This document shows, piece by piece, positions 1 through 38,628 of a stretch of DNA of 43,802 bases (position 1 is its first letter; the number at the start of each line of letters is the position of its first letter). The DNA lies in the NCBI RefSeq assembly GCF_001194135.2, contig NC_068981.1, positions 76,474,109-76,517,910 of the forward strand, given 5' to 3'. The translations under genes were made by a program, and so were the position numbers. This stretch comes from Octopus bimaculoides (lineage: Eukaryota). The notes under the pieces were generated by a model that had not been told where the DNA came from, made no database searches, and saw nothing but the letters and a program-made list of their open reading frames with translations.

Positions 1-477
1 ATATATGTATATATATATACGTGGGTTTTCAGCAGTTTACAATTTAAACTCATAGATATAGTGTAGCGTCAGACAAAATACAGAAACAAAAGAGAATAAA
101 AGGGATTTAGTTTGACTATATATTACAATTCTATCTTGATAGTCAGATTTTTGGAGAGAAAATGCAAAACAGAATGAAGAATAAAATTAAGCTTTTAAAG
201 TGTTAGAGTGATAAGAGACTGATCATCCTGTATTTATAAACTCTTTCTTCGATTCTTTGAAGGATCGAAGTCAACATTGGTCTTTCGCAACAAAACAACT
301 GGATTGATTCAGTTTCTATTTAAAGTTATTTTATTGCTGTCCAGATTTTATGTCCTTTTTTAAACCCTAGAAATAGGTTAGTAGATATATTCACCCCACC
401 CCGTTTATATATATATTATTTCATACACAATTATATGTGACTATATTAGTATTCGCGTCTTTATATTATGATTATAT

Positions 478-739
478 GTCTGTGCACACGTTTGAATGTG
501 GTGTGTGCCAGAGGGTTTGCAAATCCAATGGGGGTCTTAAAAGACATGTTAGGATCCACAATGAGCAGAACTTACTTGCAGGTATTGGTAGTGCAAATCA
601 GAGGTGCAATCTGTGTGGGTGTTTTTTCAAAACACTGTCTGGTTTAAAAAGCCACATCAGACGCCATGAAAGGGCTAAGGTGTAGGTGCAGGAGGTGGTC
701 AAACTCTGTTTAAGGAGTAGACAACCACCATATATATAT
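478..739 (+). mobile_element. Probable 5'-truncated 3' end of a non-LTR retrotransposon (LINE, RTE-like) encoding two C2H2 zinc fingers
   Basis: Frame to TAG 683-685 reads FECGVCQRVCKSNGGLKRHVRIH-NEQNLLAGIGSANQR-CNLCGCFFKTLSGLKSHIRRH, i.e. two C-x2-C-x12-H-x3-H fingers with a non-TGEKP linker. There is no ATG or splice acceptor upstream, and the stop is followed by a 45-nt 3' UTR running into (TA)n at 731. The fingers are seen directly; the LINE origin is inferred. Confidence 0.6.
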
Positions 740-1261
740 NNNNNNNNNNNNNNNNNNNNNNNNNNNNNNNNNNNNNNNNNNNNNNNNNNNNNNNNNNNNN
801 NNNNNNNNNNNNNNNNNNNNNNNNNNNNNNNNNNNNNNNNNNNNNNNNNNNNNNNNNNNNNNNNNNNNNNNNNNNNNNNNNNNNNNNNNNNNNNNNNNNN
901 NNNNNNNNNNNNNNNNNNNNNNNNNNNNNNNNNNNNNNNNNNNNNNNNNNNNNNNNNNNNNNNNNNNNNNNNNNNNNNNNNNNNNNNNNNNNNNNNNNNN
1001 NNNNNNNNNNTATATATATATATATGAGTGTGTGTGTGTGTGTGTGTATGTTATATTCACACATATATATGCAGATGTGCCGTATATGCATATACACGTG
1101 AATATTCAAATGTATATATATATATATAAATTCAAATGCACAAAACTACCCACATATATGCATTCATTATTTTACACACCCACACTGACATATGAGCTTA
1201 CTACTTATCGGTCTGTCTAAGTAACTGTCTAGCTAAGTATTTATTTATTTCTCTGTCTATT

Positions 1262-5090: not shown

Positions 5091-6334
5091 CATGGGTTGG
5101 AAAAAATAATGGAAACACCTAAAGATTTCAAACAAATTTATTTTAACATGGGGTAGGACCGCCTTTGGCGGTAATTACAGCTTGAATTCTACAAAGTTTA
5201 TATTGTTTTCAAAGGAATTTTTGTCCATTTTTCAGCTAAAACAATTTCGAGTTCTTGTAGTGATGATGGTGGAGGATAACGACTCCTTACTTGCTTTTCT
5301 AAAATGAATCATAAATGTTCAATAATATTGAGATCTGGGGACTATGGTGACCAGATAAGATTCTCAACTTCACTAGAATGTTTCTTGTGCCATTCACTAA
5401 CAAAGTTAGGTGTGTGAATTGGTTCATTATCATCCTGAAAGATTGCACTTCCCTCTGGAGGAAACAGTTCCACAAACAGATAAAATGCTTAAATAGACTT
5501 CACTATTAATTCTGCCATGAAGGAAAACCATTGGGATGGCGGATTTCCAAGATGTAGCCCCACCATCAGATCATCACAGATCCTCCTCCATGTTTAACAG
5601 TTGGAAGAAGGCAGTCTGGGTCAAATGTTTCTTTTGGCTATTTCCACACGTTTACTCGACCGGTGCTCGTAAATAAGGTAAAGGATGACACGTTCGAGAA
5701 AATAACATTCTCCCACTGCTCTAGGGACCTATTCTGTAGGTTTTTACACCACTCTAAAAGCTTTGCAACATTTGTTTTTAAAAGTAGTGGTTTTCTGATT
5801 GCAGCGCTCCTCTGAAATCCGGCTTGGTGCAGCTCGCAGCGAACAGTTTTTGTGGAAACTGGTTCTCGAGGTGGTCATTAAGCTCTGCAGTAATTTTGGG
5901 AGCTGTACTCTTGTGATCCTTTCTAACAATTCACTTAAAAGTCCGACGGTCCATATCTGAAAGATTTGGTTTTCTTCCGGAGTTTTGTTTTGACAAGGAA
6001 GTTTTCCTTCTTTCTCAAAGGCTCTTATTACTTTCCAGACAGTACTTCTTCATACGCCAGACATTTCGGCTGTTTTTGTTACGCTAGCAACTGCCATACG
6101 AGCACCAACAATTTGACCTCTTTGAAAGTCCGATAGATCTGTTATTTTAATGAATTTTAATTACCTTTTCCTGATGATATCTGAAAAGAAACAACAATTT
6201 TAGCAAAGCATGTTAAGCAACATTAATACTTAATCAAAAAATATAAAAATAAACAATCTTTTGACGGTCTTATATATATTTCAAAATTATGAAACTAAGA
6301 TGCTAGGTCTTTCGATTATTTTGTCCAACCCCTG
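5091..6334 (-). mobile_element. Tc1-like DNA transposon, near full length, decayed
   Basis: Imperfect terminal inverted repeats: catgggttggaaaaaataatggaaacacct at 5091 versus the reverse complement caggggttggacaaaataatcgaaagacct ending at 6334. TA lies on the left flank and CA/TA on the right. Length is 1244 bp with transposase remnants inside. Confidence 0.93.
5143..6145 (-). pseudogene. Tc1 (DD34E-type) transposase pseudogene
   Basis: Minus strand reads ITDLSDFQRGQIVGARMAVASVTKTAEMSGV*RSTVWKV..., ENVIFSNVSS (from FSDES, first Asp lost), AIFQDDNEP, WSP*SPDLNIIEHL and RIQAVITAKGGPTPC*. It carries multiple stops and frameshifts, and the start codon has mutated to ATA. Confidence 0.9.
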
Positions 6335-12851: not shown

Positions 12852-13123
12852 AAAATAGCTTAAACGATTGTAAATTGCAATGAATGAAAATTAATTTGCA
12901 AAGTCAATTGAAATTCTAACGAGTTTTAAAACTCTTGAGTTTGAATATGTAATTCATGTTGTAGATATCTCTCTTTCTCCCTCTCTCCCCCCNNNNNNNN
13001 NNATATATATATATATATATATATGAAGGAGAAGTATCTGCCATGTCTTCCCAATAGTTTTAGGCAGTAATTGGAGGAAAATCTTAGCTTCTTAGAAGCA
13101 CACAACTCACTTATGTCCATATA

Positions 13124-13540
13124 GGCGCAGGAGTGGTTGTGTGGTAAGTAACTTGCTTACTCACCACATGGCTCCGGATTCAGTGCCACTGCGTGGCACC
13201 TTCGGCAAGTGTCTTCTACTATAGCCTCGGGCCGACCAAAGCCTTCTGAGTGGATTTGGTAGACGGAAACTGAAAGAAACCCGTCGTATATGTGTGTATA
13301 TATATATAAATATGTGTGTGTGTATGTTTGTGTGTCTGTGTTTGTCCCCCCACCCCCGCCAACATCGCTTGACAACCGATGCTGGTTGCTGGTGTGTTTA
13401 CGTCCCCATAACTTAGCGGATCGTCAAAAGAAACGATAGAATAAGTTCTAGGCTTACAAAGAATAAGTCCTGGGGTCGATTTCCTCGACTAGAAGGCGGT
13501 TCTCTAGCATGGCCGCAGTCAAATTACTGAAACAAGTAAA
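13124..13540 (+). mobile_element. Full-length tRNA-derived SINE (family A) with a 9-mer tandem tail to about 13590
   Basis: tRNA-like head ggcgcaggagtggttgtgtggtaag...ggattcagtgcc, body ccttcggcaagtgtcttctactatagcc, an internal TA/TG tract, and 3' end agcatggccgcagtcaaattactgaaacaagtaaa. Homologous copies lie at 20474-20853 and 25443-25810. Resembles described octopus tRNA-SINEs; the exact family is not assignable by eye. Confidence 0.9.
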
Positions 13541-15003
13541 GTTTCAACAAGTAATGAAAGTAAAGAAAGTAAAGAAAGTAAAGAAAGTAAATATATGACA
13601 AACTTTGGAGACAATATATACAGAAACTACACAGCGTCAATTAAATCGATTTCACTATTTCTGTGGTGTTTGAAAATCAAAGTCAGCCTTGAGGTATTAT
13701 TATTAACTCATACTGTGAACGGCTGTAAAGAATGTAGTACAATTTACTAAAATATTCCACCATATTACTTTCTAACAATGTCATAAAGCCACTTATTGAG
13801 AAGTGTTCGTTGGATTCATTGACCTCTAATACCCGGTGGGTATTTATTTTATCAAAGTTAACCTCGATGGGGTTCGAGATGAAAACACAAAGAGAACAAC
13901 TGAATAATGTATGGTATGAAATTTATCCTATCGATCTCGCAAATTATCTCAACATTTATACGCAAAATAATCCATTTATATACATTTCAAACAAGTGATA
14001 TCCCTTATCAGCAGTTAGTTGTATTAAGGACAAATAATGTAGAAACAGTTGTGACATCCACACTACTTTCAAAAATATTAACAAAGTTACTGAAATAAAT
14101 GACAGCCGCCAGAAATATAACTTGTATGAATGCCATCGTATCTTGTAAGCTCGGACGGTCTCCATTCATATTTCATTTCTGGAGTCACCAGAATAAATGC
14201 CAGACCAACTCTTGAGGTAAATAGGCACTCTAAAACATGTATTCAAAATTGATGACGGACATTTCTTCTGCTAACACTAATGTCCTCATAACCCTTAATG
14301 CAGTGAATACAATCAATTCACTTCTAATGAGTCTCTTCATTTAGCACTCATTGAAAGATACATTCTTCATACAAGAAGATAATACCATAGAAAAGAAAAA
14401 TCATGGCGCATATTATCACCAATGGACTCAGTATAAGATGATTAAAATGAAAAAGAAAAAAACATTAATGTATTGAATAACGTCGAAAATATCTGAAAGT
14501 TTTCTTTGGAAATTTAAAATGTGCAGCCTGTATGTCTGGTGATTTCACTCGTAAAAATATATTTCAGAAATATATAAACTCTATGGCTATGAAATAATTT
14601 ATACATTTGCACATTAGCACACACACGTAGACACAACTCAGTACCAGTGCACTTGATAAATTAAATGAACACACAACACACACACACACACACACAAATA
14701 TGCCTATGTTTGTATGTTTGGAAATTTAATATTATACCTGATATTTTTTCTAAGTAATGGTGAGTATATTATAGAAACTACTAGTTTTTGTTCATTAGAT
14801 ATCATTCTACGTTTTTATTTTATCAACTTGCTCTGAGTTTTGCTTCTGTTCTTCTTTTTCCTTCTTTAGTTCTAGTCAGGCATTAGTTTGATAACAATCA
14901 CAATAATCATGCTAAATGTAATGATGAAAACTATATAACATACTATCAAAAAAAGCAAGAGAACAGGAGTTAAAATTAACTGGGAATGGTGTGATTTCGT
15001 CAG

Positions 15004-15116
15004 AAGAATGCTGCTACACATTAGAATATTGTAGGACCTCCAAACATGGACGTTGCTGCTGCAACGTTAATCAGCGTTGTACGAGCGGTCAACCCCGCTT
15101 CTGCGCAGTTCATTAA
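15004..15116 (+). CDS. Candidate terminal exon for a small cysteine-rich peptide
   Basis: Acceptor gatttcgtcAG with a ttaac branch-like site about 20 nt upstream. Reads (x)ECCYTLEYCRTSKHGRCCCNVNQRCTSGQPRFCAVH*, with 8 Cys in two identical 16-aa spacings. The segment is locally GC-rich, with an AATAAA at 15399. No upstream signal-peptide exon was found. Confidence 0.3.
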
Positions 15117-15669
15117 TCTGCCAAAAATTGCTACAAATTCCATCAAATGACTTCATAGTCTCCCATCGAGATTTTCACCTTTAAGATAATGGGTTGCCGA
15201 TTGAATCATAAATCTGCTTCATTAGAGTTTACCAGAAGGTGTTGTTTAACCCAGAATTAGATAACATCTTGAGCTCTATAAAACCGAAATGTCTCTGTAT
15301 CTAAACAGGTACGCGTCAGCTACACAATTGGCTACGTTATATATTTAGAACAAAATATTTATTTTTACTAGTACTATAATGTCCGTAGGGTTCTAGAGAA
15401 TAAATTGTTCTCGGTGTAGTTCAATCTAGATGTAATGAGATACTATGAGAATGTGAAGTGGTTCTCTATAATCGGCAAGAACAGGGAATCGTTAAGGTAT
15501 CGCTAACTTGTGCTTTTATCAACGGATAGATGGAAGAGCATTGTAGAGAATGAAGGAGAATATATTTTAGATAAAAAGAGAACTTTCTTTATCTTAATTT
15601 TGAAAAATAAAAGAAGAATATAAAAACGTCATTGTTAATGGGATGACCAAATATTTTGTAATGATAAAA

Positions 15670-15810
15670 AGGCGCCAAGCTAGCAGTATCGTAAGCACGT
15701 CGGAAAATAAAAAAAAAACACCGAGAGGCATTTCGTCCGTCTTTACGAACTGAGTACAAATTGCGCCGAGGCCAACGTTCCCTTTCATTCTTTCGGGATT
15801 CATGAAATAA
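15670..15810 (+). mobile_element. Degenerate SINE (family B) fragment
   Basis: ggcgccaagctagcagtatcgtaagcacg...ttcattctttcgggattcatgaaataa aligns by eye with the 22792-23022 copy. Confidence 0.65.
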
Positions 15811-16093
15811 TCTACAAATATTACGGTCAATATGATCGATTATCCCCCTCCCACAAGATTTCACCTTTCTGTTTATAATAGAAAGAGTTATTGTTTCTGT
15901 TGTTGTTGATGTTATTGCTACTGTTTCGTTAGCACGTCGAGCTGATGCTTCTGCACCACGTAATGCACCGAAATCCATTGTATAGTTTCCCACCCACGAG
16001 GGAGCGATGCAGGATGTGTCGAAACGTTCGTTGTGGTCATTAAGGTTTCCAGTATGTTCCGTCTTCCGTATCAATTATTTCTATTATGTCTGC

Positions 16094-16138
<45 letters not shown>

Positions 16139-17309
16139 CGTGTGTCACGATATATGGATTCCAGCAATCCGACGGTACTCGTAAAAAAGCACCTTAGTTT
16201 ATCATAGCACAAACCATATAGATTATATAGTAATATACATGAGAAACGAATAATGGGAATATACAGATATAAATGATGGAGATTGTATGTAAGTATGTAT
16301 GTATGTATGTATGTATTACTTTGCTGCTATTTGGCTACCTCGGATTAAATACAAATATCACATAATTAAGAAGACAAACAGCACAGAACATAATGGTTCT
16401 TGTTATTAAAAACAACATTACGAGGTAGTTTGAAATCATTTAAGTGTGACATGTTGTCACCTTTTGGTTTAAAGGGTACTTCAGGATACTGAGAGACATT
16501 TCTTTCCAGTTTAAATTAGTCAATGTTCGTAATGGTTTTGTTAGGGTAACAATATTACAAGACATGTTTCTTCTTTCAAAGAATTGTTTTTTTTTTCTAT
16601 GTTAAAAAAAATCAATAGTATATGACGCGTGTGATAATGGAGTGACAATTTGAAGGCAGAAATGTCCAATTAACACATCGGTAATGCAGTATCATTGTAT
16701 GATTGTTAAGTGCCAAATCAGACGCCTTCATTTTAATGTCAGTTTTTTTTTTGGGGCTTCGTTCAGTCAATAAACTACACTGTAATTTCTCAAGAATTAG
16801 ACATTTCAGTATTCCAAATTGATCTATCTTTGTGTCTTTGGCTTCCTATGAGACAACTTCATAATATAAATTGGACATGCATCTCTCTAGACATATCGAT
16901 TTAGTTACAAAACCTCTGATATAAATAGCCTTATAGTTTATTGAATCTAGTTATGTCGCATATCACGTTTTGGTTTTCCGGGCATCATCGAAAACCTCCT
17001 TTTCACATAACATTAATACTGCTAGGTAACGACTATAGCTTATTTATACTTATAACTACAAAGAAATTTACAAATAAGTGAACAACTATTCTTTTAGGTG
17101 AGTAGAACTAAGAAGACGTGACATTTATATACTTTTATTTACATATATACACAAAAAATACTGAAGCTGGAAGCAATTGTTTACTTGAAATTTTGAATCG
17201 TTTTGCAACACAAATATCAATGTAGCTTTGAAACCAAAAAGTCGATTTATGCCAATCATATATTAACGTAGATTAACGACAATTACAATATGCGTTGCAC
17301 AGTTGGGTG

Positions 17310-17595: not shown

Positions 17596-18477
17596 GAGAG
17601 GGTACCGAAAAGAAACTGGAAATTTGCAGTATTATTTTATCCAGAGAGTTCTACATATTTACACTTTTATCACCTTCAGAATATTCTCCATTTGAAACAA
17701 CGTATCGCTCCAGACGCATTTTACACTATTCGAAGCAGTCCTAGAACTCGTGCGATGTAATGCTTTTTAACGCCTCCGTCGTTTTCCTTTCACCTCTTCC
17801 ACATTAAAAAATTCCATATCACCAGCTTTCGGCACCAGCGATGACTTTCGAAAATAGATCCGGGTTAACCTCCAGCTGTTCTTTCAGTTCACGACACACG
17901 GTCAGTTGTGACTGCTGGTGAACTTCCGTTAGCAACCCAGGCACAAATTTTGCTGCAACTTTTTTCATTCGCAATTCATCGCTCAAAATTCTTTAACAGG
18001 AGTATCAGGACACATCACTCATATCAAGAAGTTCGGCAATTGTTCATTGATGGTCCTCCAAAATTATTTCATGAATTTTCATGATGTTTTCATTCGTTCA
18101 GGATGTCGACAGTCGTCCTGAGCCTGGGCTTCAAGCGACAAGTGACCATTCCTAAAACGTGAACACCACCCGCAAGCGTTTGTTTTGCTCATGGCAGCAT
18201 CCTTGTAAGCTTTTTTGAATGTTGACATCTGTTTCGGTCGTCGTTTTCCCCAGCAGAAAACAGAATTTCAGGGAAGAACGCTGTTACTTTGTTTCAGCCA
18301 TCGCCAAATTCGACGAACAGGAGAGAAGCTCTGCAAAACAAACATGCACCAATTAGCAGTACGCTCATGCTAGACGATGCTGAGGGTTTTATCAAATAGC
18401 TTCTCGCGGCGGAAGCCTGATCTACAACGAGCTTGTCCTACAAACAACGTTTCCTGTTACTTTTCGGTACTTCCCTG
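17595..18477 (-). mobile_element. Mariner-like transposon, internally deleted, inserted in a (TA)n tract
   Basis: TIRs cgagagggtaccgaaaagaaactggaaa (17595) and the reverse complement cagggaagtaccgaaaagtaacaggaaa (ending 18477). TA on both flanks within (TA)n; length 883 bp. Confidence 0.92.
17651..18301 (-). pseudogene. Mariner transposase remnant lacking most of the catalytic domain
   Basis: Reads MAETK*QRSSLKFCFLLGKT..., RMKKVAAKFVPGLLTE (WVP-type motif) and LFSKVIAGAESW*YG (from TGDESW), then jumps at about 17810 to NVEEVKGKTTEALKSI...SNGEYSEGDKSV. It contains stops and frameshifts. Confidence 0.88.
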
Positions 18478-18843
18478 TATATATATNNNNNNNNNNNNNN
18501 NNNNNNNNNNNNNNNNNNNNNNNNNNNNNNNNNNNNNNNNNNNNNNNNNNNNNNNNNNNNNNNNNNNNNNNNNNNNNNNNNNNNNNNNNNNNNNNNNNNN
18601 NNNNNNNNNNNNNNNNNNNNNNNNNNNNNNNNNNNNNNNNNNNNNNNNNNNNNNNNNNNNNNNNNNNNNNNNNNNNNNNNNNNNNNNNNNNNNNNNNNNN
18701 NNNNNNNNNNNNNNNNNNNNNNNNNNNNNNNNNNNNNNNNNNNNNNNNNNNNNNNNNNNNNNNNNNNNNNNNNNNNNNNNNNNNNNNNNNNNNNNNNNNN
18801 NNNNNNNNNNNNNNNNNNNNNNNNNNNNNNNNNNNNNNNNNNN

Positions 18844-20410: not shown

Positions 20411-20444
<34 letters not shown>

Positions 20445-20473
20445 ATGTATATTTATATATACATTTTTTATGC

Positions 20474-20850
20474 GTTTCAGTAATTTGACTGCTGCTATGC
20501 TGGAGCACCGCTTTTAGTCAAACAAATCGACCCCAGGCCTTATTCTTTGCAAGCCTAGTACTTATTCTATCGGTATCCTTTGCCAAACCGTTAAGTTAAG
20601 GAGACGTAAACACACCAACATTGGTCAAGTGATGATGGAGGGAAAAACGCAGACACACAAACACACATATACATACATACATATATCTATACGATGGGCT
20701 ATTTTCAGTTTCCGTCTACCAAATCCACTCCCAAGGTTTTGGTCGGCCCGAGGCTATAGTAGAAGACACTTGCCGAAGGCGCAATGCAGTGGCACTAAAC
20801 CCCAAACCGTGTGGTTGGTAACACGCTACTTACCAGACACCCACTCTTGC

Positions 20851-20853
<3 letters not shown>
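20474..20853 (-). mobile_element. SINE family A copy
   Basis: Reverse complement of the 13124-13540 element, head at right (...cttaccagacacccactcttgcgtc). Confidence 0.9.
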
Positions 20854-20892
<39 letters not shown>

Positions 20893-22705
20893 TGAGGCAG
20901 CTAGTTAGCAGAGTTTCGCCCAAAAAGCAAGCAACAGATATCATTAAATATGACTGAAGGTATTAGAACACTTACACTTCTAGAAATAAGACCTAACTGG
21001 CTTTATTGCTGCTGTGAAAGCGTTGACACCAGCAAGAGAGCTCTTACCTTGCTGAGTCTACATTTATACATCACAATATACGATTATTCTTTGGAATAAT
21101 TAAATATTTTTCAGCAATAGCTCTGTGTGGCTGCTTCCACAGGTGGTTGGAATGTGATAAATCAAATCGCACAGCTATATATATATATATATATATGCAA
21201 GTATTCTTGTTTTACATAGAAGGCAACACAAATGATAATTCAACAAAGTAAAGATTCACTGAACGTTTCCTAAACAATGCTTTATATATGCGCTTTCACT
21301 TCTTGCAAAATATATAGGCAATAAAATGGCAATGACCCATCCAAACTAGCTCTGCTGCAAGCCCTATCCACCTATTGATCGATCGAGTCATTCCATATGA
21401 ACATGAATTACATGGAAAACGCAGCATGATATATCTAACTTAAAACAATTAATGGAAATGCCAAATCAAACCAAGTACAAACAGAATATGGGCTGAGATA
21501 ATTATGTGTCTCTTATGTTGTGAGAACAAAGACAACATATCATGTGATACCGCATTTTCAAATACAAGCAAATACAAAAATTGGCGAATGAATTTAATGA
21601 ACAACCTTTTTTTAATTCTGACGTTTATAAATTAATTTTCATTATATATGAAGTTAAGTTTACACTTACGAACATAAGCATAAGCACATTCAAGTGTAAT
21701 AAGACTTTCTATATATACGAATGCATATGCATGTGCGTGTGTGTTTATATATATATATATATATATATATATNNNNNNNNNNNNNNNNNNNNNNNNNNNN
21801 NNNNNNNNNNNNNNNNNNNNNNNNNNNNNNNNNNNNNNNNNNNNNNNNNNNNNNNNNNNNNNNNNNNNNNNNNNNNNNNNNNNNNNNNNNNNNNNNNNNN
21901 NNNNNNNNNNNNNNNNNNNNNNNNNNNNNNNNNNNNNNNNNNNNNNNNNNNNNNNNNNNNNNNNNNNNNNNNNNNNNNNNNNNNNNNNNNNNNNNNNNNN
22001 NNNNNNNNNNNNNNNNNNNNNNNNNNNNNNNNNNNNNNNNNNNNNNNNNNNNNNNNNNNNNNNNNNNNNNNNNNNNNNNNNNNNNNNNNNNNNNNNNNNN
22101 NNNNNNNNNNNNNNNNNNNNNNNNNNNNNNNNNNNNNNNNNNNNNNNNNNNNNNNNNNNNNNNNNNNNNNNNNNNNNNNNNNNNNNNNNNNNNNNNNNNN
22201 NNNNNNNNNNNNNNNNNNNNNNNNNNNNNNNNNNNNNNNNNNNNNNNNNNNNNNNNNNNNNNNNNNNNNNNNNNNNNNNNNNNNNNNNNNNNNNNNNNNN
22301 NNNNNNNNNNNNNNNNNNNNNNNNNNNNNNNNNNNNNNNNNNNNNNNNNNNNNNNNNNNNNNNNNNNNNNNNNNNNNNNNNNNNNNNNNNNNNNNNNNNN
22401 NNNNNNNNNNNNNNNNNNNNNNNNNNNNNNNNNNNNNNNNNNNNNNNNNNNNNNNNNNNNNNNNNNNNNNNNNNNNNNNNNNNNNNNNNNNNNNNNNNNN
22501 NNNNNNNNNNNNNNNNNNNNNNNNNNNNNNNNNNNNNNNNNNNNNNNNNNNNNNNNNNNNNNNNNNNNNNNNNNNNNNNNNNNNNNNNNNNNNNNNNNNN
22601 NNNNNNNNNNNNNNNNNNNNNNNNNNNNNNNNNNNNNNNNNNNNNNNNNNNNNNNNNNNNNNNNNNNNNNNNNNNNNNNNNNNNNNNNNNNNNNNNNNNN
22701 NNNNN

Positions 22706-25073: not shown

Positions 25074-25442
25074 GTAAATATGTTTAAATTTTATGTTTAC
25101 ATTATGTTGACGTCTAGATTAAATAGTGGGATATTTAGTTTTGAATGAAACAGATTTGATAATACATCTACATAAACTGTGTCACAAACAAAGGTCGTGT
25201 ATATGGACGTCTAGGCTAGTTTCCATATAACAGTATCGACTATGGGAAACATAATGAGACTTATACAATGTAATTAGCAACAGATGTTCCTTATAGCTTA
25301 CTCAGAGAAGGGAAGGTGATCTCTAGAAAGTTTTTTTTTCAGGATTATAGAGTCAGACTAAAAGGGAGCTATAAGCTTCGACGCATAGATTACTACAGCA
25401 ATTGTATATTTCTGTGTGCATATATTATTTTATTCTTTTATT

Positions 25443-25810
25443 CTTTTACTTGTTTCAGTCATTTGACTGGGGTCATGTTGGAGCACCGCCTTTTAGTCGA
25501 AGAAATCGATCCCTGGACTTATTCTTTGTAAGCCTGGTAGTTATTCTATCGGTCTGATTTGCCGAAACGCTAAATTACGGGGACATAAACACACCAACAT
25601 CGGTTGTCAAGCGATGTTGTAGGGGGACAGACACAATTACAAAGACACGCATATATATATACGTTTACATACGACTGGTTTCTTCCATTTTCTGTATACC
25701 GAATCCACTCACAAGGCTTTGGTCGGTCCGAGACTATAGTAGAAAACATTTGCCCAAGGTGACACGCAGTGGGACTGAACCCGGAACCATGTGGTTGGGA
25801 GACAACATTC
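25443..25810 (-). mobile_element. SINE family A copy, 5' end degraded
   Basis: cttttacttgtttcagtcatttgactg...gggactgaacccggaaccatgtggttgg, homologous to 13124-13540. Confidence 0.9.
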
Positions 25811-25954: not shown

Positions 25955-26332
25955 GGCACCCCGTCGGTTACGACGTCGAGGGTTCCAGTTGATCCGATCA
26001 ACTGAACAGCCTGCTAGTGAAATTAACCGGCAAGTGGCTGAGCACTTCACAGACACGTGCACCCTTAACGTAGTTCTCGGGGATATTCAGCGTGGCACAG
26101 TGTGACAAGGTTGACCCTTTGAATTACAGGCACAACAGAAACAGGAAGAAAGAATGAGAGAAAGTTGTGGTGAAAGAGTACAGCAGGGTTCGCCACCACC
26201 CCCTGCCGGAGCCTCGTGGAGCTTTAGGTGTTTTCGCTCAATAAACACTCACAATGCCCGATCTGGGAATCGAAACCGCAATCCTATGACCGCTCGAGTC
26301 CACTGCCCTTAGCACTGGGCCATTGCGCATCC
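25955..26332 (-). mobile_element. tRNA-derived SINE (family C)
   Basis: Minus strand begins ggatgcgcaatggcccagtgctaagggcagtggactcgagcggtcataggattgcggtttcgattcccag (A and B boxes). Its 3' tail is shared with 27240-27550. Confidence 0.88.
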
Positions 26333-27550: not shown

Positions 27551-28119
27551 ATCAGTATATATNNNNNNNNNNNNNNNNNNNNNNNNNNNNNNNNNNNNNN
27601 NNNNNNNNNNNNNNNNNNNNNNNNNTATATATATATAGCAAACAGTTTTGACCATTGCACGTAATTCCCAATAAATGTTTTATGTGCCCCTGCTTTCGTT
27701 TTTCCACTTACACGTGTATATGTATGTATGTATATGTATGTACAAAGTATGGGGTTTTAGTTTATAGGTGATCTAAACGATTAAGTACGCTAAGGTAAGT
27801 GCTGTTACGGATTACTGGAGATCTAAGATTATAGCCGAGCCGGTAGTTATGGAGTCATTGCAGATTTTCGATGCAACGGATATAGGATTGTTAAACAGGA
27901 CGTCAAACATTAAGGCAAGGCAAACATCTGAAGTCATATACAGTATTACAGGAAGAAATACAAAATCTTACACCTGTTTCTGGGATATTCCCGAGTATGG
28001 GATATTCCGTCATCAGAGACAAATTGGGGGAGAAATATGGAAAATGAGAATGGTATATATCAATAAAATGACAACATAGAGGAAGGAGGTAAAAGAATAA
28101 GAGAAAAAAAAGGAAGTCT

Positions 28120-28241
28120 AACTTTCCGAAGTTATAGAAGCTAAAGCATGTATCCTTAGGTGCAATCCTGCGTATATCCATGGGTCTACGCCTGATTGCA
28201 CCTAAGGACTCACGCTTTGATTTCTATAACTTCGGAAAGTT
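28120..28241. repeat. Foldback / MITE-like inverted repeat
   Basis: 55-bp arms 28120-28174 and 28187-28241 match at 47 of 55 positions, with the outer 20 bp perfect; the loop is 12 nt. Confidence 0.9.
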
Positions 28242-28351
28242 GAACCATGAACTTTTATGCTTCTTTTTTCCTTCTGTCTTTCGTGGATTCAAGACTTGTG
28301 TTGGGTGGCGCGTTTTGTACTTCTTTGTTCCAGCTTCCTTGTTCCAGTTAC

Positions 28352-28354
<3 letters not shown>

Positions 28355-28418
<64 letters not shown>
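28355..28418. repeat. (GA)n microsatellite
   Basis: Seen directly. Confidence 0.95.
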
Positions 28419-30845
28419 CGGATCTGTATACATACATAGATTCTAACATCATTATATACCACTTCGTATCTTAGTTCTCTATTTTTTTCCACTAAGCAGA
28501 CACTTGGCATATCTTGACTTATGGATCTGAGTGTCACAACTTATCGTTTAAATCAATTACATAATTTATGTAAGAATAACCATCAAGGCAATATCACATT
28601 AGCCTACCAGTTTCTAACGTTATTCTTAGAATTTGAGACTGATTCATATTTAGTCTAGCTGATTTTTAATGGCGTACTCAGATCAGGGAAATCACTACCC
28701 ATTAATAATTTTCTAGCACAGCTTGATTTGTAAGTGGAAGTTAGGTAAGTTATTCTCTCATGATTGACTGATACTTCAAACAGCGTGGACGCCGCTAAAA
28801 ATACCCAAGATTCAGAAAGTGGTGTTAAGCTGTGGAAGAATGGGGTAGCTTTCAGAGACAACGATATACTATTTTTGTACACGAAAATTTCAATCACAAA
28901 GCTTTGTTCCAGTAAAGACTATGGAAAATGGTACTAAGAAACTGCATAATAGTGAGACTACGTTGTTGCGAAGTGTAAGGTTGCAGAATAAGCGGTCACT
29001 TGGCTGCAAGTCAAATATTTTAACTATACAGTATTGCTTGCACCCATTGTATGTCAGTATATAGTATTTACTATGATTGAAATTCCAGGTTTCTCTGAAT
29101 CTGAGTGCAAAGCTTCAAACTGGAATGCGTTTGTGAAAATAATTTCTAAGTTTGGACTATTTCTGTAGCACAAAACTCATTCAACTCTTTCTCACTCCAT
29201 CCACAATTCTCTTTATCTCTCTTCCTCATATGAACTGCAGTGACCGTTTAATATAGCGCAAAGCGTAATATTTTAAGAATATCTTCAACATTTATTTCAA
29301 CAGCTTTCAGATATAGCTTCTGTATCTTTACGCTTCGACAAAATTAAAGAAAGTATTAACATTCGAAAGAAAATATAGACTCTTCTCGCAAATGATTATA
29401 TACTCACACTCACATGCACACACTCACACACACGCATACACGCATACACACACACACACACACACACATACAACTTACTTGCTATCATGCAGAGGTCTGG
29501 CGATAACGTTTAAATTGTTGAACGTCAAAATTTTATTTGGTTAAACGTAACTGGTGATTTGCCAAACAAGCAGTTAAATTCATCTATATTGCTAATGGAG
29601 TTTATATGTACAGATCAATGCCGTGAGATCAGTTTTATTCATTATCAATAACAGTATAACAATATAGATATTTGATGTCTTTCAAATGTATTTTTATCAA
29701 CTTTAATTGATTATATGACTCATTATACAAAGATAAAATATTATTGATTTTAACGTATATTCACAATTTATTACCACGGTGCATATAAGTGTGCCTGTAT
29801 ATATGTATGATCTTCCAGGTTTGTCTCAGTTTGATGGTTCTGTCGTAAAAGCGATTAAGTTTAACTGCAGCTAAATTATGTATGCGTTCGTACGTGTGTG
29901 TGTGTGTGTGTCTCTGTGGGCGCGTGTGTGTGATTATATACGTACATAGAAACGTGTGTTTGTGTGTGCGTATATATATATATATATATATATATATATN
30001 NNNNNNNNNNNNNNNNNNNNNNNNNNNNNNNNNNNNNNNNNNNNNNNNNNNNNNNNNNNNNNNNNNNNNNNNNNNNNNNNNNNNNNNNNNNNNNNNNNNN
30101 NNNNNNNNNNNNNNNNNNNNNNNNNNNNNNNNNNNNNNNNNNNNNNNNNNNNNNNNNNNNNNNNNNNNNNNNNNNNNNNNNNNNNNNNNNNNNNNNNNNN
30201 NNNNNNNNNNNNNNNNNCCCCCCCCCCACAAAAATTTCCTTTCTTGAGCTATAGTGTTACAAAAAGCACAATATACTCTAGACTAAGGAGAAAAGAAATT
30301 CCCACCATAAGTGAACGCGAGGGCAACAGATACGCATTTCGCCACTCTGCTACCTCTCAGTGTGAAGTAGTCGCATCACTTCCAAGACAAATTATAGTTA
30401 ACTAGTTTGAAGTGTATATAGGCAGTGCATTAACTATACATCAGCAACGAATAAGCAGATAACATTCCAATTAGGCAACGGACGCACTTCTTTAGTAAAA
30501 ACTCTATCAATACAATATACTTATGTATGTGTGGTCGAAACATCCATACGTAGACCTCGAGTTCTGTTTCGGTTCGATCAACAGTCAGCTCCTTTGCAGT
30601 AACATCTATGCACTGGTGACTTATACTCTGAGTAGTCTTTATTTATCAGCGTCTAGCTGCCATCCTTGAGGATGCTGATCCTAGGCATCCTACCAAGTTT
30701 TAACACCGGTGCAGCTAAGACAAAAAAGGCGCCTTCTCTTATAGACATGATTTATCAGAAAATAAAGGGTAACTTAGTCACATTTTTTATGCAGCAAGCA
30801 GAATCTGAATATTTCCTCCTTTTTATTAACTGTGTGTCGCATGTG

Positions 30846-31676: not shown

Positions 31677-31880
31677 CATTATTTATTTTTCTAGTTATTT
31701 TTCTTTTATTAATAGTAGTATAACTACAATTTTACTCTGTACTTTATTTATCACAATTCCCTAACATTTTATTTATAATTAAAAATGATTTTTAAATGTC
31801 TGTTAAAACATTAATTTAGGTTTCTTCATGATATGCTAATAATTAAATAAATTCGTTTATTCCTCTTTCTCTCAATATAG

Positions 31881-31980
31881 CAACAGTGCTGTACCGGACA
31901 CTGCGTTTTCGAATCCGATGTATGAAGAACGCAACAGTCGACAGCAGTTATTGGCAGCTGACAGTAGCACGCGGTGCTAA
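31881..31980 (+). CDS. Terminal coding exon with FxNPxY motif (cytoplasmic tail of a putative endocytic type I membrane receptor)
   Basis: Acceptor tttattcctctttctctcaatatAG. Frame (x)NSAVPDTAFSNPMYEERNSRQQLLAADSSTRC* ends at TAA 31978-31980. The exon has CpG/GC-rich, coding-like composition in AT-rich flanks, with polyA signals downstream. Confidence 0.72.
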
Positions 31981-32059
31981 ATCCATGTGACACAAGCGTC
32001 CAAAAGATCTCATTTACAGTATGGTCTTTATTGCATCAAGTACTGGCATAACAAGTGAA

Positions 32060-33165: not shown

Positions 33166-34286
33166 TTGATAATTGTGTATACTAATTAACAATGGAAATT
33201 CTTAATTGAAAAATATCTTGTAATAAAATTAGAGCACCCTTAGAACAAACATTTAAACGCTTCTAGTGACATGCGTTAATGTTGATTAAAATTAATTTAG
33301 ATAAAATAACATGTATATGTATATCTCTCTATCTATCTNNNNNNNNNNNNNNNNNNNNNNNNNNNNNNNNNNNNNNNNNNNNNNNNNNNNNNNNNNNNNN
33401 NNNNNNNNNNNNNNNNNNNNNNNNNNNNNNNNNNNNNNNNNNNNNNNNNNNNNNNNNNNNNNNNNNNNNNNNNNNNNNNNNNNNNTATATATATATTATA
33501 TGATATAAAATATATCCGAAGTTTTCGTTAAATTCTTTGAAAATAAATTATACCGAAAAAGATTCTCTTTGGATTTGATATGTCTTTGTCTTCAGCCAGA
33601 AACTGCTGTAGTTTTAAAAAGTAATTATAGTTCCCCAGTACAAAGACAACAGTTATAGGACGTATCCTCGTGTTAGACGATTATTATTGTTATTCTTTTT
33701 TTGTCAAGGACTTTTTGATCTTATTGTTTTGTTATAAATCTAATCCAGACATCAAATTCAATCGAGTGATTATTTTCCTTTCTTTTTGTTTTTGTTTTGT
33801 TTTGCTGTGTGTTGATTTGTTCGTTTGGGAGAGATGCTTGTGTTTGTTGTTTTGGGATGGGAGATACGTGCTTAGTGTCAATTTAAATGATTTATAAATT
33901 GTTAAATGTACCAGTTAGACTCATTTGTTTAAATTCATTGAAATGCAAGCATGGACAACATGTATGTAACTATTACATACATACATTATATCATAGAAAA
34001 AGAACTTTACTCAAGCAATTGACAACGTGTACAATAAAAGGTTTATCACACTATTAAAATAGCAACTAATTTTTCCAGTCATATGAGTTCATCTGCAATT
34101 GAATGTATATTTATGCTACATGTAAGTATGATGTTTATATGACGCATATATGAAAGTGTACGCTGTATGTATGTTATATGTATGTTAGTACATGTATATA
34201 TCAAATATGTATATATAACAAGTATGGCCTTTGCGATGACAACAATTTGTGACTCATTGCTAGTAACTGATTAATTATTCTCGTAG

Positions 34287-35287: not shown

Positions 35288-35470
35288 GGCGGCGAGTTCA
35301 CAGAGTCGTAAGCACGTCTAACAAAATGCTCTGCAAGCATTTCGTCCGTCTCGAGTTCAAATATTGCTGACGTCGACTTTGTCTTTCGAGGAATAATAAG
35401 ATAAGTACCAGCTGTGTAATAAGGCTACAATCCCTCGACATTGCTGGCATTGTGCCAAAATTTGAAGCCA
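35288..35470 (+). mobile_element. Degenerate SINE family B copy
   Basis: ggcggcgagttcacagagtcgtaagcacg...gagttcaaat...gtcgactttgtctttc...ataagtaccag. Confidence 0.75.
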
Positions 35471-37439
35471 TAAATTGTTGCAGTTATGAGAAGTGTCTGT
35501 CGTTGGAAATAGTTGGAGTATTCAACTATTGTTGTTTTCAAAATTGTAAGCGCTCGGAGAAAATACGATCAGACATAATATTAATATATTTTAAAGACTA
35601 TACACAGCATAATCACACTCACGCACACACACACACATATTCCCGCACGCGCGTATATGTGTAGGTGAATGTCATTGTTAGCAGTTCCAAGTTTCTAGCT
35701 TCCTATATTTGGTTTATGTGCTACTAGCTCCAACTACGTAACTCTGTGTCCTAGCATAATGGGAGGGTACTGTCCCCTAACGCTAAGCTCTGAGATCGGA
35801 ACTATTATCTGCTAACAAATTAATACACAAATATATATATATATATAGATGTTTGGGGTGGGTATATGTTTGTGTGTGTACGCACACATATGTATATATA
35901 TACATCGTGATTTAAACCGAATATGAATGTATGTACGTATATACATATATCGATATATTTCAATATACCACTAGTAAGTATATATAATATACTTATGTGT
36001 ACGTAGATTTATGTGAGTGTATGTGCATATATGTGTGTGCAAGATTATAGGCATATTTATATATTGGTGTGAATGTATATGTGTGTGTGCGCGTCTGTGT
36101 GCATGCATATGTATATGTATATTTGTATATATGAATTTAGGTGCGTTCATTGGAAACAGACACAGGCAAATCAAAAGTATGTTGATCGAACGACATTAAC
36201 GGTAAAGAAATATTCGTAGAAATTACCTGATTTGGAAAAAATGATTGAAGAAAAACACGTTGTTCAATGTAAAATCAGAGTTTTGTCGGAAATGCAGTTA
36301 AAGTGTACAGATAATGATGCACTGATGCATTCATATTGGAGTTCACAATATGTAAAATTTCTAAAATATCTTTATACATATAGAAGAAATGTGGCACTGA
36401 GTAACATTCCATTAGCTTCAAAGGTCAACTTCTTTCGTGGCCAGATTTAATTTTCATATATTTAGTGCCAACAAACGAAGAACTCAAAGGAAGAGGAATA
36501 TAGAATCGATTATAATCGTCACAGAATGTGTGATATTTTCGATTTACTTAGCAGTTAGTGCCATTCTTATAATCAGTAAATCATTTAGACCATTCAAAGA
36601 GGCATCAGATGAGTGATGATTCATGTGACGAGCAGTCGAAGGTACACGGAAAGATGAAAATAATTCGATCGTATAATTTTAAAATTATCTACAAATATGT
36701 GAAAANNNNNNNNNNNNNNNNNNNNNNNNNNNNNNNNNNNNNNNNNNNNNNNNNNNNNNNNNNNNNNNNNNNNNNNNNNNNNNNNNNNNNNNNNNNNNNN
36801 NNNNNNNNNNNNNNNNNNNNNNNNNNNNNNNNNNNNNNNNNNNNNNNNNNNNNNNNNNNNNNNNNNNNNNNNNNNNNNNNNNNNNNNNNNNNNNNNNNNN
36901 NNNNNNNNNNNNNNNNNNNNNNNNNNNNNNNNNNNNNNNNNNNNNNNNNNNNNNNNNNNNNNNNNNNNNNNNNNNNNNNNNNNNNNNNNNNNNNNNNNNN
37001 NNNNNNNNNNNNNNNNNNNNNNNNNNNNNNNNNNNNNNNNNNNNNNNNNNNNNNNNNNNNNNNNNNNNNNNNNNNNNNNNNNNNNNNNNNNNNNNNNNNN
37101 NNNNNNNNNNNNNNNNNNNNNNNNNNNNNNNNNNNNNNNNNNNNNNNNNNNNNNNNNNNNNNNNNNNNNNNNNNNNNNNNNNNNNNNNNNNNNNNNNNNN
37201 NNNNNNNNNNNNNNNNNNNNNNNNNNNNNNNNNNNNNNNNNNNNNNNNNNNNNNNNNNNNNNNNNNNNNNNNNNNNNNNNNNNNNNNNNNNNNNNNNNNN
37301 NNNNNNNNNNNNNNNNNNNNNNNNNNNNNNNNNNNNNNNNNNNNNNNNNNNNNNNNNNNNNNNNNNNNNNNNNNNNNNNNNNNNNNNNNNNNNNNNNNNN
37401 NNNNNNNNNNNNNNNNNNNNNNNNNNNNNNNNNNNTATG

Positions 37440-37976: not shown

Positions 37977-38628
37977 NNNNNNNNNNNNNNNNNNNNNNNN
38001 NNNNNNNNNNNNNNNNNNNNNNNNNNNNNNNNNNNNNNNNNNNNNNNNNNNNNNNNNNNNNNNNNNNNNNNNNNNNNNNNNNNNNNNNNNNNNNNNNNNN
38101 NNNNNNNNNNNNNNNNNNNNNNNNNNNNNNNNNNNNNNNNNNNNNNNNNNNNNNNNNNNNNNNNNNNNNNNNNNNNNNNNNNNNNNNNNNNNNNNNNNNN
38201 NNNNNNNNNNNNNNNNNNNNNNNNNNNNNNNNNNNNNNNNNNNNNNNNNNNNNNNNNNNNNNNNNNNNNNNNNNNNNNNNNNNNNNNNNNNNNNNNNNNN
38301 NNNNNNNNNNNNNNNNNNNNNNNNNNNNNNNNNNNNNNNNNNNNNNNNNNNNNNNNNNNNNNNNNNNNNNNNNNNNNNNNNNNNNNNNNNNNNNNNNNNN
38401 NNNNNNNNNNNNNNNNNNNNNNNNNNNNNNNNNNNNNNNNNNNNNNNNNNNNNNNNNNNNNNNNNNNNNNNNNNNNNNNNNNNNNNNNNNNNNNNNNNNN
38501 NNNNNNNNNNNNNNNNNNNNNNNNNNNNNNNNNNNNNNNNNNNNNNNNNNNNNNNNNNNNNNNNNNNNNNNNNNNNNNNNNNNNNNNNNNNNNNNNNNNN
38601 NNNNNNNNNNNNNNNNNNNNNNNNNNNN

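What the first reader, a model, noticed from the sequence alone, without database searches (positions are those of the whole stretch)
15004..15116. Cysteine-rich mini-exon with a perfect tandem CC-x5-C-x7-C framework
Seen: the frame gives CCYTLEYCRTSKHGRC immediately followed by CCNVNQRCTSGQPRFC. These two 16-aa units have identical Cys spacing but otherwise dissimilar residues, and there is no obvious DNA repeat, so a simple tandem duplication does not explain the periodicity. The segment is GC-richer than its flanks, has an acceptor in phase 1 and ends in a stop. Established: CC-C-C is cysteine framework I of alpha-conotoxins (commonly 4/7 spacing). Inference: a possible undescribed secreted disulfide-rich peptide (toxin- or defence-like) nested in an intron. 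The resemblance is by spacing only, no signal-peptide exon was found, and other frames here are also partly open.
Basis: partly seen in the sequence, partly recalled or inferred. Interest (0 to 1): 0.7.

Follow-up and report, generated by a model that had tools for sequence, protein, structure and literature searches.

The report
Cysteine-patterned short ORF, probably chance
A 36-codon stretch that reads as two back-to-back CC-x5-C-x7-C cysteine motifs is really there and can even be joined to a signal-like mini-exon 244 bases upstream, but nothing else supports a gene, so it is more likely a chance reading frame in repeat-rich non-coding DNA than a new toxin-like peptide.

Summary
The + strand frame starting at 15009 reads CCYTLEYCRTSKHGRC|CCNVNQRCTSGQPRFC-AVH-stop. 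It is preceded by an AG in phase 1, is GC-richer than its flanks, and has no DNA-level repeat.

ATG 14714 opens a 15-codon hydrophobic mini-exon that ends in a perfect phase-1 donor (atg|GTGAGT). Splicing 14759 to 15004 gives a complete 52-codon ORF.

Several points argue against a gene:
- No homologue in 1.84 billion representative proteins, Pfam, PDB, metagenome contigs or the literature.
- The acceptor has no polypyrimidine tract.
- Three out-of-frame ATGs lie just upstream of a start codon in poor context.
- The signal-like stretch has no -3/-1 cleavage site.
- An AlphaFold model is no more confident than one of another chance Cys-rich ORF from the same window.

Null simulations put the Cys layout alone at about 4e-4 per window, or roughly 20 per octopus-sized genome.

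The alpha-conotoxin link is by spacing only. It fails on loop size and on precursor organisation, and no sequence similarity was detected.

Verdict: chance ORF about 0.58, real orphan two-exon secreted-peptide gene about 0.27. RNA-seq junction reads and orthologous sequences would decide. Neither was available here.

The parts
14928..15113 (+). Stop-to-stop open frame (62 codons, no in-frame ATG) that contains the cysteine pattern
15009..15056 (+). Unit 1: CCYTLEYCRTSKHGRC (Cys codons TGC TGC .. TGT .. TGC); starts with (TGC)2
15057..15104 (+). Unit 2: CCNVNQRCTSGQPRFC (same Cys codons); with the last codon of unit 1 it forms (TGC)3 at 15054-15062
15114..15116 (+). TAA stop after the AVH tail
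15002..15003 (+). Candidate acceptor AG (tcAG|AA), phase 1. Pyrimidine fraction at -21..-3 is 0.42, below the mean (0.46) of all 2,034 AGs in the window. A second AG at 15005-15006, 3 nt downstream, is in the same phase.
14714..14759 (+). Putative first coding exon: ATG + MFGNLILYLIFFLSN + 1 base. It is hydrophobic and signal-like. It has no basic residue and no small residues at -3/-1. The start context is poor (T at -3, T at +4).
14760..15003 (+). Putative 244-nt intron. It begins GTGAGT (perfect donor, phase 1), has 29.5% GC, carries TTAAC at 14976-14980 (24-25 nt before the 3' splice site), and has no AG between that motif and the acceptor.
14665..14708 (+). Three out-of-frame upstream ATGs (14665, 14700, 14706) within 50 nt of the putative start. 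The 14700 ATG has A at -3, and its 9-codon uORF overlaps the putative start.
15399..15404 (+). First AATAAA downstream (283 nt after the stop); not diagnostic in AT-rich DNA
14571..14578 (+). TATATAAA, a TATA-like motif 136-143 nt upstream of ATG 14714; not diagnostic in AT-rich DNA

Best explanation
The segment is a chance open reading frame in repeat-rich, AT-rich non-coding eukaryotic DNA. A local GC-richer patch contains two short (TGC)n runs, which give five of the eight Cys codons, plus three isolated TGY codons that happen to fall in register. The frame therefore reads as two CC-x5-C-x7-C units. It makes no peptide. The signal-like mini-exon upstream is a fortuitous ATG-initiated run of AT-rich (F/I/L/Y) codons that ends at a GTGAGT. 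That the pattern exists is shown. That it is not expressed is inferred from the weak gene signals and the lack of relatives.
For: 1. No relative of the 62-aa frame was found:
- Word-index search of 5.8 billion clusters found nothing.
- An exhaustive HMMER search of 1.84 billion representatives gave only five hits. All are long tandem-repeat proteins whose scores are summed over 3-14 weak stretches, and none has the Cys layout.
- Pfam gave nothing in six frames of 14401-16200. PDB sequences gave nothing. Metagenome contigs gave nothing.
- The spliced 52-aa and 51-aa products are not in the 15-billion-protein collection. There are no literature strings and no paralogue in the window.

2. The gene signals are weak:
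- The acceptor pyrimidine fraction is 0.42, against a mean of 0.46 for all AGs. 72% of random AGs are as good or better.
- Three upstream ATGs lie within 50 nt, more than at 85% of random ATGs, so there is no depletion.
- The start has T at -3 and T at +4.
- No position in MFGNLILYLIFFLSNEE satisfies the -3/-1 small-residue rule for signal peptidase (read from the sequence).

3. Five of the eight Cys codons lie in (TGC)2 and (TGC)3 runs, the commonest trinucleotide-repeat class.

4. Cys-dense stop-free stretches (7 or more of 32) outside microsatellites occur at least three other times in this window.

5. The null simulation gives the broad 'tandem identical 4-Cys layout' class at about 4e-4 per window, or about 20 per 2.7 Gb genome. 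Complete pseudo-genes also arise by chance: ATG, hydrophobic stretch, GTRAGT, intron, in-phase AG, 8 or more Cys.

6. The AlphaFold single-sequence model has pLDDT 63.7 and pTM 0.35. Another chance Cys-rich ORF of the same window scores 65.9 and 0.35. The fold search finds nothing significant.
Against: - The joint configuration is improbable under the null. The pattern is about 4e-4 per window. A phase-1, strong-donor, signal-like exon within 300 nt upstream has probability about 0.003. The 14714 feature is the only hit of that screen in the window, on either strand, that is not in or starting in microsatellite or low-complexity sequence.
- The 'exon' is GC 0.47 while the 'intron' is 0.295.
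- A TTAAC branch-like motif sits 25 nt before the acceptor with an AG-free zone of 34 nt. Only 16% of AG-to-AG gaps are that long.
- The non-Cys residues are polar or charged, as in real disulfide-rich peptides, unlike the hydrophobic low-complexity chance models from the simulation.
- The Cys codons are identical between the two units.
- The absence of homologues is weak evidence. None of 10 raw ORFs of this window is in the protein collection, so this genome may not be represented there.
Confidence: 0.58

Rival explanations
1. A real, lineage-restricted ('orphan') two-exon gene for a small secreted disulfide-rich peptide. Exon 1 (ATG 14714-14759) encodes a 15-residue signal sequence. A 244-nt phase-1 intron (14760-15003) follows. 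Exon 2 (15004-15116) encodes a mature peptide of about 36 residues with eight Cys (four disulfides), built from an old internal duplication of a CC-x5-C-x7-C unit whose non-Cys residues have since diverged. This architecture, a signal exon, a phase-1 intron and a mature-peptide exon, is that of defensin-type genes. The function would be defence-like or toxin-like.
For: - The spliced CDS is exactly 159 nt and gives MFGNLILYLIFFLSNEECCYTLEYCRTSKHGRCCCNVNQRCTSGQPRFCAVH*.
- The donor atg|GTGAGT is perfect and in the required phase. It is the only hit of the signal-like-exon screen on either strand of the window that is not in microsatellite or low-complexity sequence. The null probability of such an exon within 300 nt is about 0.003.
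- The Cys layout occurs at about 4e-4 per window by chance.
- Exon GC is 0.47 against intron GC 0.295.
- A branch-like TTAAC and an AG-free zone precede the acceptor.
- The number of Cys is even, the loops are polar, and the Cys codons are identical in both units.
- AATAAA lies 283 nt after the stop.
Against: - No homologue, paralogue or annotated product anywhere.
- The acceptor lacks a polypyrimidine tract.
- Three upstream ATGs, one in a good context, with a uORF that overlaps the start. The start's own context is poor.
- The signal is very short, with no basic n-region and no -3/-1 site.
- The thresholds for 'as good as observed' were partly set after seeing the hit. With looser donors, 3 phase-1 candidates occur in the 15 kb upstream.
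- There is no structural support.
Confidence: 0.27
2. A decayed relic. The segment would be a former coding exon, or a fragment of a cysteine-rich repeat protein or mobile-element gene, that is no longer expressed. The Cys periodicity would be a fossil of real structure and the surrounding gene signals would be lost.
For: - GC-richer and CpG-richer DNA extends from about 15000 to about 16100, between two microsatellites. It includes a 161-codon ORF on the other strand.
- The window is full of transposon remnants.
- Identical Cys codon choice in both units hints at an old duplication.
Against: - No Pfam or homology hit for any frame of 14401-16200 or for the 161-aa ORF.
- No second copy in the window.
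- Outside the Cys codons the two units are no more alike than chance, 12/36.
Confidence: 0.08
3. The segment belongs to something read on the other strand or in another frame, such as an exon of a minus-strand gene or a non-coding RNA. The Cys frame would then be incidental.
For: Other frames are open across it: 15046-15150 on + and 15021-15146 on -. The region is GC-richer than its flanks.
Against: Six-frame Pfam found nothing. Rfam and tRNA scans of the whole window found nothing. The alternative ORFs are only 34-41 codons and have no exact entries in the collection.
Confidence: 0.05
4. A true homologue of alpha-conotoxins (A-superfamily, framework I) in this genome.
For: Each unit has the CC-C-C arrangement that defines framework I (PMC4278219).
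Against: - The loops are 5/7 rather than the 4/7 or 3/5 types.
- Conotoxin precursors are a signal peptide, a propeptide and a single mature copy, and they are classed by a conserved signal sequence (PMC4278219). Here there is no propeptide and there are two fused units.
- No sequence similarity to any protein in the searches.
- The fold search hit to conotoxin GS has E 6.8 and probability 0.08.
Confidence: 0.01

Closest known systems
Alpha-conotoxins (conotoxin cysteine framework I, CC-C-C; A-superfamily)
   Same: Two adjacent Cys followed by two single Cys, short polar loops, and a C-terminal position in the putative precursor.
   Different: - Loop lengths are 5/7, not 4/7 or 3/5.
- Two units are fused head to tail, giving an 8-Cys CC-C-CCC-C-C pattern. 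As far as I recall (not checked here), this is not one of the 26 described conotoxin frameworks.
- There is no propeptide, and no sequence similarity was detected.
- The host is apparently not a cone snail.

The resemblance is by spacing only (PMC4278219).
Defensin-type two-exon genes (signal-peptide exon, phase-1 intron, mature-peptide exon), e.g. beta-defensins (from general knowledge)
   Same: The gene model found here has exactly this layout. Exon 1 is the signal only, a phase-1 intron sits at the expected cleavage region, and exon 2 is a cationic Cys-rich mature peptide ending in a stop.
   Different: It has eight Cys in a tandem CC-C-C layout rather than six in a defensin layout. There is no sequence or fold match. 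The signal peptide and the acceptor are sub-standard.
Known cephalopod venom and salivary components (cephalotoxins/DECA-CTX, CRISPs, phospholipases, serine proteases)
   Different: They are large multi-domain proteins (LDL-A, Sushi, TSP1, EGF modules; bioRxiv 10.64898/2026.04.09.716377), not 36-residue peptides. No similarity was found.
Cys-coding (TGY)n micro- and minisatellites
   Same: Five of the eight Cys codons here lie in (TGC)2 and (TGC)3 runs. A collection-wide scan for the 8-Cys DNA framework returned only such repeats.
   Different: The locus as a whole has no DNA periodicity at 48 nt or at any other offset.

Membership tests
Alpha-conotoxin / A-superfamily conotoxin | Cysteine framework I (CC-C-C) | tested here: met
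   It is present twice in tandem, at 15009-15056 and 15057-15104. The framework definition is from PMC4278219.
Alpha-conotoxin / A-superfamily conotoxin | Characteristic loop classes (e.g. 3/5, 4/7) | tested here: not met
The loops are 5 and 7 residues in both units.
Alpha-conotoxin / A-superfamily conotoxin | Precursor made of a conserved superfamily signal peptide, a propeptide and a single mature copy | tested here: not met
   The best gene model has a 15-aa hydrophobic start, no propeptide and two fused units. The precursor definition is in PMC4278219.
Alpha-conotoxin / A-superfamily conotoxin | Detectable sequence similarity to family members | tested here: not met
   There is no true hit in 1.84 billion representatives, PDB or Pfam.
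Secreted disulfide-rich peptide gene (generic) | N-terminal signal peptide | tested here: inconclusive
   MFGNLILYLIFFLSN has a 9-residue hydrophobic core. It has no basic n-region and no -3/-1 small-residue site. No signal-peptide predictor was available.
Secreted disulfide-rich peptide gene (generic) | Even number of Cys in a compact mature peptide | tested here: met
   Eight Cys in 32 residues.
Secreted disulfide-rich peptide gene (generic) | Functional splice signals joining the signal exon and the mature exon in frame | tested here: inconclusive
   The donor GTGAGT is perfect and the phases match. The acceptor has no polypyrimidine tract, with pyrimidine fraction 0.42 against a background of 0.46.
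Secreted disulfide-rich peptide gene (generic) | Transcription and translation | not testable with these tools
   No transcriptome or proteome of the source organism is reachable. Exact-product look-ups were negative.
Secreted disulfide-rich peptide gene (generic) | Conservation of Cys codons in orthologues or paralogues | not testable with these tools
   No related sequence was found in any reachable collection. Related eukaryotic genomes are not searchable here.
Dispersed repeat / transposable element | Further copies, or similarity to transposon proteins | tested here: not met
   There is no second copy of 14700-15600 in the window and no Pfam hit in six frames. Copy number in the whole genome is untested.
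Tandem DNA repeat (minisatellite) coding for periodic Cys | Nucleotide-level periodicity at the unit length | tested here: not met
   24/48 bases are identical, and 12/36 outside the Cys codons. Offset 48 is not above other offsets. TRF reports nothing here.

The most novel reading that the evidence does not exclude
The locus is a real orphan gene. It would be a two-exon, 52-codon precursor (signal exon 14714-14759, phase-1 intron, mature exon 15004-15116) for a secreted 8-Cys peptide made of two diverged CC-x5-C-x7-C units. That is a disulfide framework with no detectable relative in public protein space.
Probability: 0.25. Interest if true: 0.55.

Novelty: not a real feature. Interest (0 to 1): 0.25.

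Why it matters
If real, it would be a new small disulfide-rich secreted peptide with a tandem framework-I-like cysteine scaffold and no known relatives. Known cephalopod venom components are large proteins, so a peptide of this kind would be a lead for venom or innate-immunity biology and for peptide pharmacology.

If it is chance, as I judge more likely, the case is still useful as a calibration. In AT-rich, microsatellite-rich genomes, a striking Cys periodicity, and even a complete 'signal exon - intron - Cys-rich exon' model, arises by chance at a rate of several to tens per genome. Such calls therefore need transcript or conservation evidence.

Tried and rejected
1. Homology. All of these were negative or spurious:
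- Word-index search with the 62-aa frame.
- Exhaustive HMMER. The five hits are repeat proteins with summed weak scores.
- PDB sequences and metagenome loci.

2. Neighbouring 161-codon ORF at 15592-16074 on the minus strand, tried as a handle to fetch orthologous DNA. It has no homologue and is not on record.

3. Exact look-ups of 13 ORFs and models of the window. None is in the collection, so the source genome's raw ORFs are not represented there.

4. Tectonic-gene exon idea. A borderline DUF1619_N Pfam hit at 35371-35661 on the plus strand (20.8 bits, cut-off 22) suggested the window might lie in a Tectonic gene with a Cys-rich N-terminus. A homology search found nothing and the candidate itself has no such hit. 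I dropped the idea.

5. DNA-pattern scan of metagenome contigs for the 8-Cys framework. It returned only (TGY)n runs and 24-nt minisatellites, and no locus with exactly eight Cys.

6. Structure. The AlphaFold model has pLDDT 63.7 and no significant fold match. A control ORF scored 65.9, so structure prediction is uninformative here.

7. Rfam and tRNA scans found nothing.

8. Tandem duplication and an 18-nt hairpin around (TGC)3. Neither exceeds chance (and reading).

9. Alternative acceptors at 14954 and 14960 would add an 'AREQELK...' linker. They sit behind an A-run and are no better than 15002.

Full report
**What is there**

The window is eukaryotic DNA. It is 33% GC, has 11 runs of N and dozens of microsatellites, and gives no Rfam or tRNA hits.

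At the reported coordinates the + strand frame with codons starting at 15009 reads CCYTLEYCRTSKHGRC (15009-15056), then CCNVNQRCTSGQPRFC (15057-15104), then AVH and TAA. The enclosing stop-to-stop frame is 14928-15113, 62 codons with no in-frame ATG. These are the only two CC-x5-C-x7-C units in the six frames of the window.

- The AG at 15002-15003 is in phase 1 relative to this frame.
- The segment has GC 0.469, against 0.295 upstream and 0.345 downstream. Only 4.8% of 113-nt windows reach that value.
- The two 48-nt units share 24/48 bases, and only 12/36 outside the Cys codons. Offset 48 is no better than unrelated offsets. TRF and the repeat finder report nothing here.

The Cys codons are identical in the two units (TGC TGC .. 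TGT .. TGC). Five of the eight Cys lie in (TGC)2 and (TGC)3 runs.

**Is it more than chance?**

I generated 120 Mb of 4th-order Markov sequence trained on the window.

- The single (5,7) unit occurs 131 times in 240 million codons. No tandem CC-xa-C-xb-C pair occurs for any a,b from 1 to 9.
- The real window has nine such single units, close to the 6.7 expected. Two of them are the candidate.
- A deliberately broad class occurs once: two adjacent units of 10-20 residues, each with exactly four Cys in the same layout, stop-free. That is about 4e-4 per 44-kb window, or about 20 per 2.7 Gb (an octopus-sized genome, from my own knowledge).
- Cys-dense stop-free stretches (7 or more of 32) outside microsatellites occur at least three more times in this window.

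The layout is therefore unusual for one window. It is not by itself evidence of function if many windows are being scanned.

Using criteria fixed in advance, I screened the 15 kb upstream for ATG-initiated, hydrophobic, acid-poor open frames that end at a donor. This gave three phase-1 candidates.

One lies only 244 nt upstream. ATG 14714 is followed by MFGNLILYLIFFLSN plus one base, then atg|GTGAGT. Joining 14759 to 15004 gives a 159-nt CDS, MFGNLILYLIFFLSNEECCYTLEYCRTSKHGRCCCNVNQRCTSGQPRFCAVH*.

- The putative intron is 244 nt with 29.5% GC. It has a TTAAC 25 nt from its 3' end and no AG between that motif and the acceptor. Only 16% of AG-to-AG gaps in the window are that long.
- With a strong donor (GTRAGT) required, this is the only such feature on either strand of the window that is not in or starting in microsatellite or low-complexity sequence.
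- In the null sequence, phase-1 features of this kind occur at 0.0103 per kb. That gives about 0.003 for one within 300 nt. The strong-donor restriction was applied after seeing the hit, so the fair figure lies between 0.003 and about 0.06.
- The layout (signal exon, phase-1 intron, mature-peptide exon) is the familiar defensin-type architecture (general knowledge).

**What speaks against a gene**

- The acceptor has no polypyrimidine tract. Pyrimidines make up 0.42 of positions -21..-3, below the mean of 0.46 for all 2,034 AG dinucleotides. 72% of those AGs are as good or better.
- Three out-of-frame ATGs (14665, 14700, 14706) lie within 50 nt upstream of the putative start. That is more than at 85% of random ATGs in the window. 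The one at 14700 has A at -3 and opens a 9-codon uORF that overlaps the start. The putative start itself has T at -3 and T at +4.
- The signal-like stretch has 15 residues, no basic residue, and no position with small residues at -3 and -1 (read from the sequence).
- TATA-like and AATAAA motifs exist but are uninformative in AT-rich DNA.
- Whole pseudo-genes arise in the null sequence: ATG, hydrophobic stretch, GTRAGT, intron of 60-2000 nt, in-phase AG, at most 70 codons. There were 127 acceptor-level models with six or more Cys and 2 with eight or more in 48 Mb of single strand. Their peptides look more hydrophobic and of lower complexity than the candidate.

**Relatives**

None were found.

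- The word-index search found nothing.
- The exhaustive HMMER search of 1.84 billion representatives gave five hits. All are long tandem-repeat proteins scoring through 3-14 summed weak stretches, such as EDCNYTLTYVDTQTGTC repeated 14 times. None has the Cys layout.
- Pfam in six frames of 14401-16200, PDB sequences, metagenome contigs, the literature and the window itself gave nothing.
- A collection-wide DNA scan for the eight-Cys framework returned only (TGY)n runs and 24-nt minisatellites.
- The neighbouring 161-codon ORF has no homologue either.

There is a caveat. None of 13 exact ORFs or models from this window is in the 15-billion-protein collection. The source genome may therefore be poorly represented, which makes absence of hits weak evidence.

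**Structure**

The AlphaFold single-sequence model of the 41-residue frame has pLDDT 63.7 and pTM 0.35. Its best PDB fold matches are small toxins, but at E 6.8 and probability 0.10 or less. A control, another chance Cys-rich ORF from the same window (31853-31975, minus strand), scores pLDDT 65.9 and pTM 0.35. Structure prediction therefore says nothing here.

**Context**

I found no convincing host-gene exons. The window holds:
- a two-finger C2H2 ORF at 377-682;
- a Tc1/Tc3 transposase remnant at 5641-6049, minus strand;
- a weak mariner HTH remnant at 18082-18267, minus strand;
- three copies of a SINE-like repeat of about 400 nt;
- a 122-nt palindrome at 28120-28241.

**Comparison with known families**

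Framework I (CC-C-C) defines most A-superfamily alpha-conotoxins. Conotoxin precursors consist of a conserved signal peptide, a propeptide and one mature copy (PMC4278219). Here the CC-C-C arrangement is met, but the loops are 5/7, there is no propeptide, two units are fused, and no sequence similarity was found. It should therefore not be filed as a conotoxin relative.

Known cephalopod venom components are large multi-domain proteins (bioRxiv 10.64898/2026.04.09.716377).

In layout, the closest working analogy for the gene model is a defensin-type two-exon gene. There is no sequence or fold match to any defensin.

**Weighing**

Pattern rarity (about 4e-4 per window), the in-phase strong-donor signal-like exon (0.003-0.06) and the GC contrast favour a real gene.

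The acceptor without a pyrimidine tract, the upstream ATGs, the poor start context, the sub-standard signal peptide and the lack of any relative favour chance.

Real Cys-rich peptides only rarely show perfect tandem Cys periodicity, so that feature discriminates less than it seems. My estimates:
- chance ORF: 0.58
- real orphan secreted-peptide gene: 0.27
- decayed relic: 0.08
- something on another strand or frame: 0.05
- conotoxin homologue: 0.01

These weights rest partly on subjective likelihoods. Junction-spanning transcripts or conserved Cys codons in orthologues would overturn the verdict at once.

Noticed in passing
window 377-682 (+): This open frame holds two C2H2 zinc fingers (Pfam zf-C2H2, E 3.4e-10). 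It ends at a stop shortly before an assembly gap at 740-1010. It could be the end of a zinc-finger gene or part of a mobile element.
   Followed up: partly
window 5641-6049 (-): Remnant of a Tc1/Tc3-type transposase, split over two frames (HTH_Tnp_Tc3_2, E 8.6e-7, just below the Pfam cut-off).
   Followed up: partly
window 17822-18267 (-): Two short frames resemble the N-terminal HTH region of a mariner/Mos1 transposase. Pfam HTH_48 matches only weakly (E 0.0073, 18082-18267). The match for 17822-17992 is by eye only.
   Followed up: partly
window 13119-13533 (-), 20438-20858 (+), 25413-25798 (+): Three copies of a dispersed repeat of about 400 nt, 77-79% identical to each other. It is SINE-like, but ARAGORN and Rfam detect no tRNA-related part.
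   Followed up: partly
window 28120-28241: A 122-nt palindrome with two abutting 61-nt arms that are 84% complementary. It creates mirror-image ORFs on the two strands (27906-28223 on the minus strand, 28138-28443 on the plus strand).
   Followed up: no
window 15592-16074 (-): A 161-codon open frame lies 480 nt from the finding, in a GC- and CpG-richer stretch (about 15000-16100) bounded by microsatellites. It has no Pfam hit and no homologue. It is probably a chance ORF.
   Followed up: yes
window 35371-35661 (+): A Cys-containing ORF has a borderline Pfam hit to DUF1619_N, the Tectonic N-terminal domain (20.8 bits, cut-off 22). The homology search found nothing, so the hit is probably spurious.
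   Followed up: yes
window 740-1010, 18487-18843, 21773-22705, 36706-37435, 37977-38628 and six shorter runs: Eleven runs of N total 3,524 bases. At least the five largest (those listed) abut TA/TG or other simple-repeat tracts. The assembly appears to break at simple repeats.
   Followed up: no
window 31829-32035 (-), 26115-26309 region (-), 33631-33894 (+): These are other non-microsatellite stop-free stretches with seven Cys in 32 codons. They show that Cys-dense chance frames recur in this window. The first served as the AlphaFold control.
   Followed up: partly
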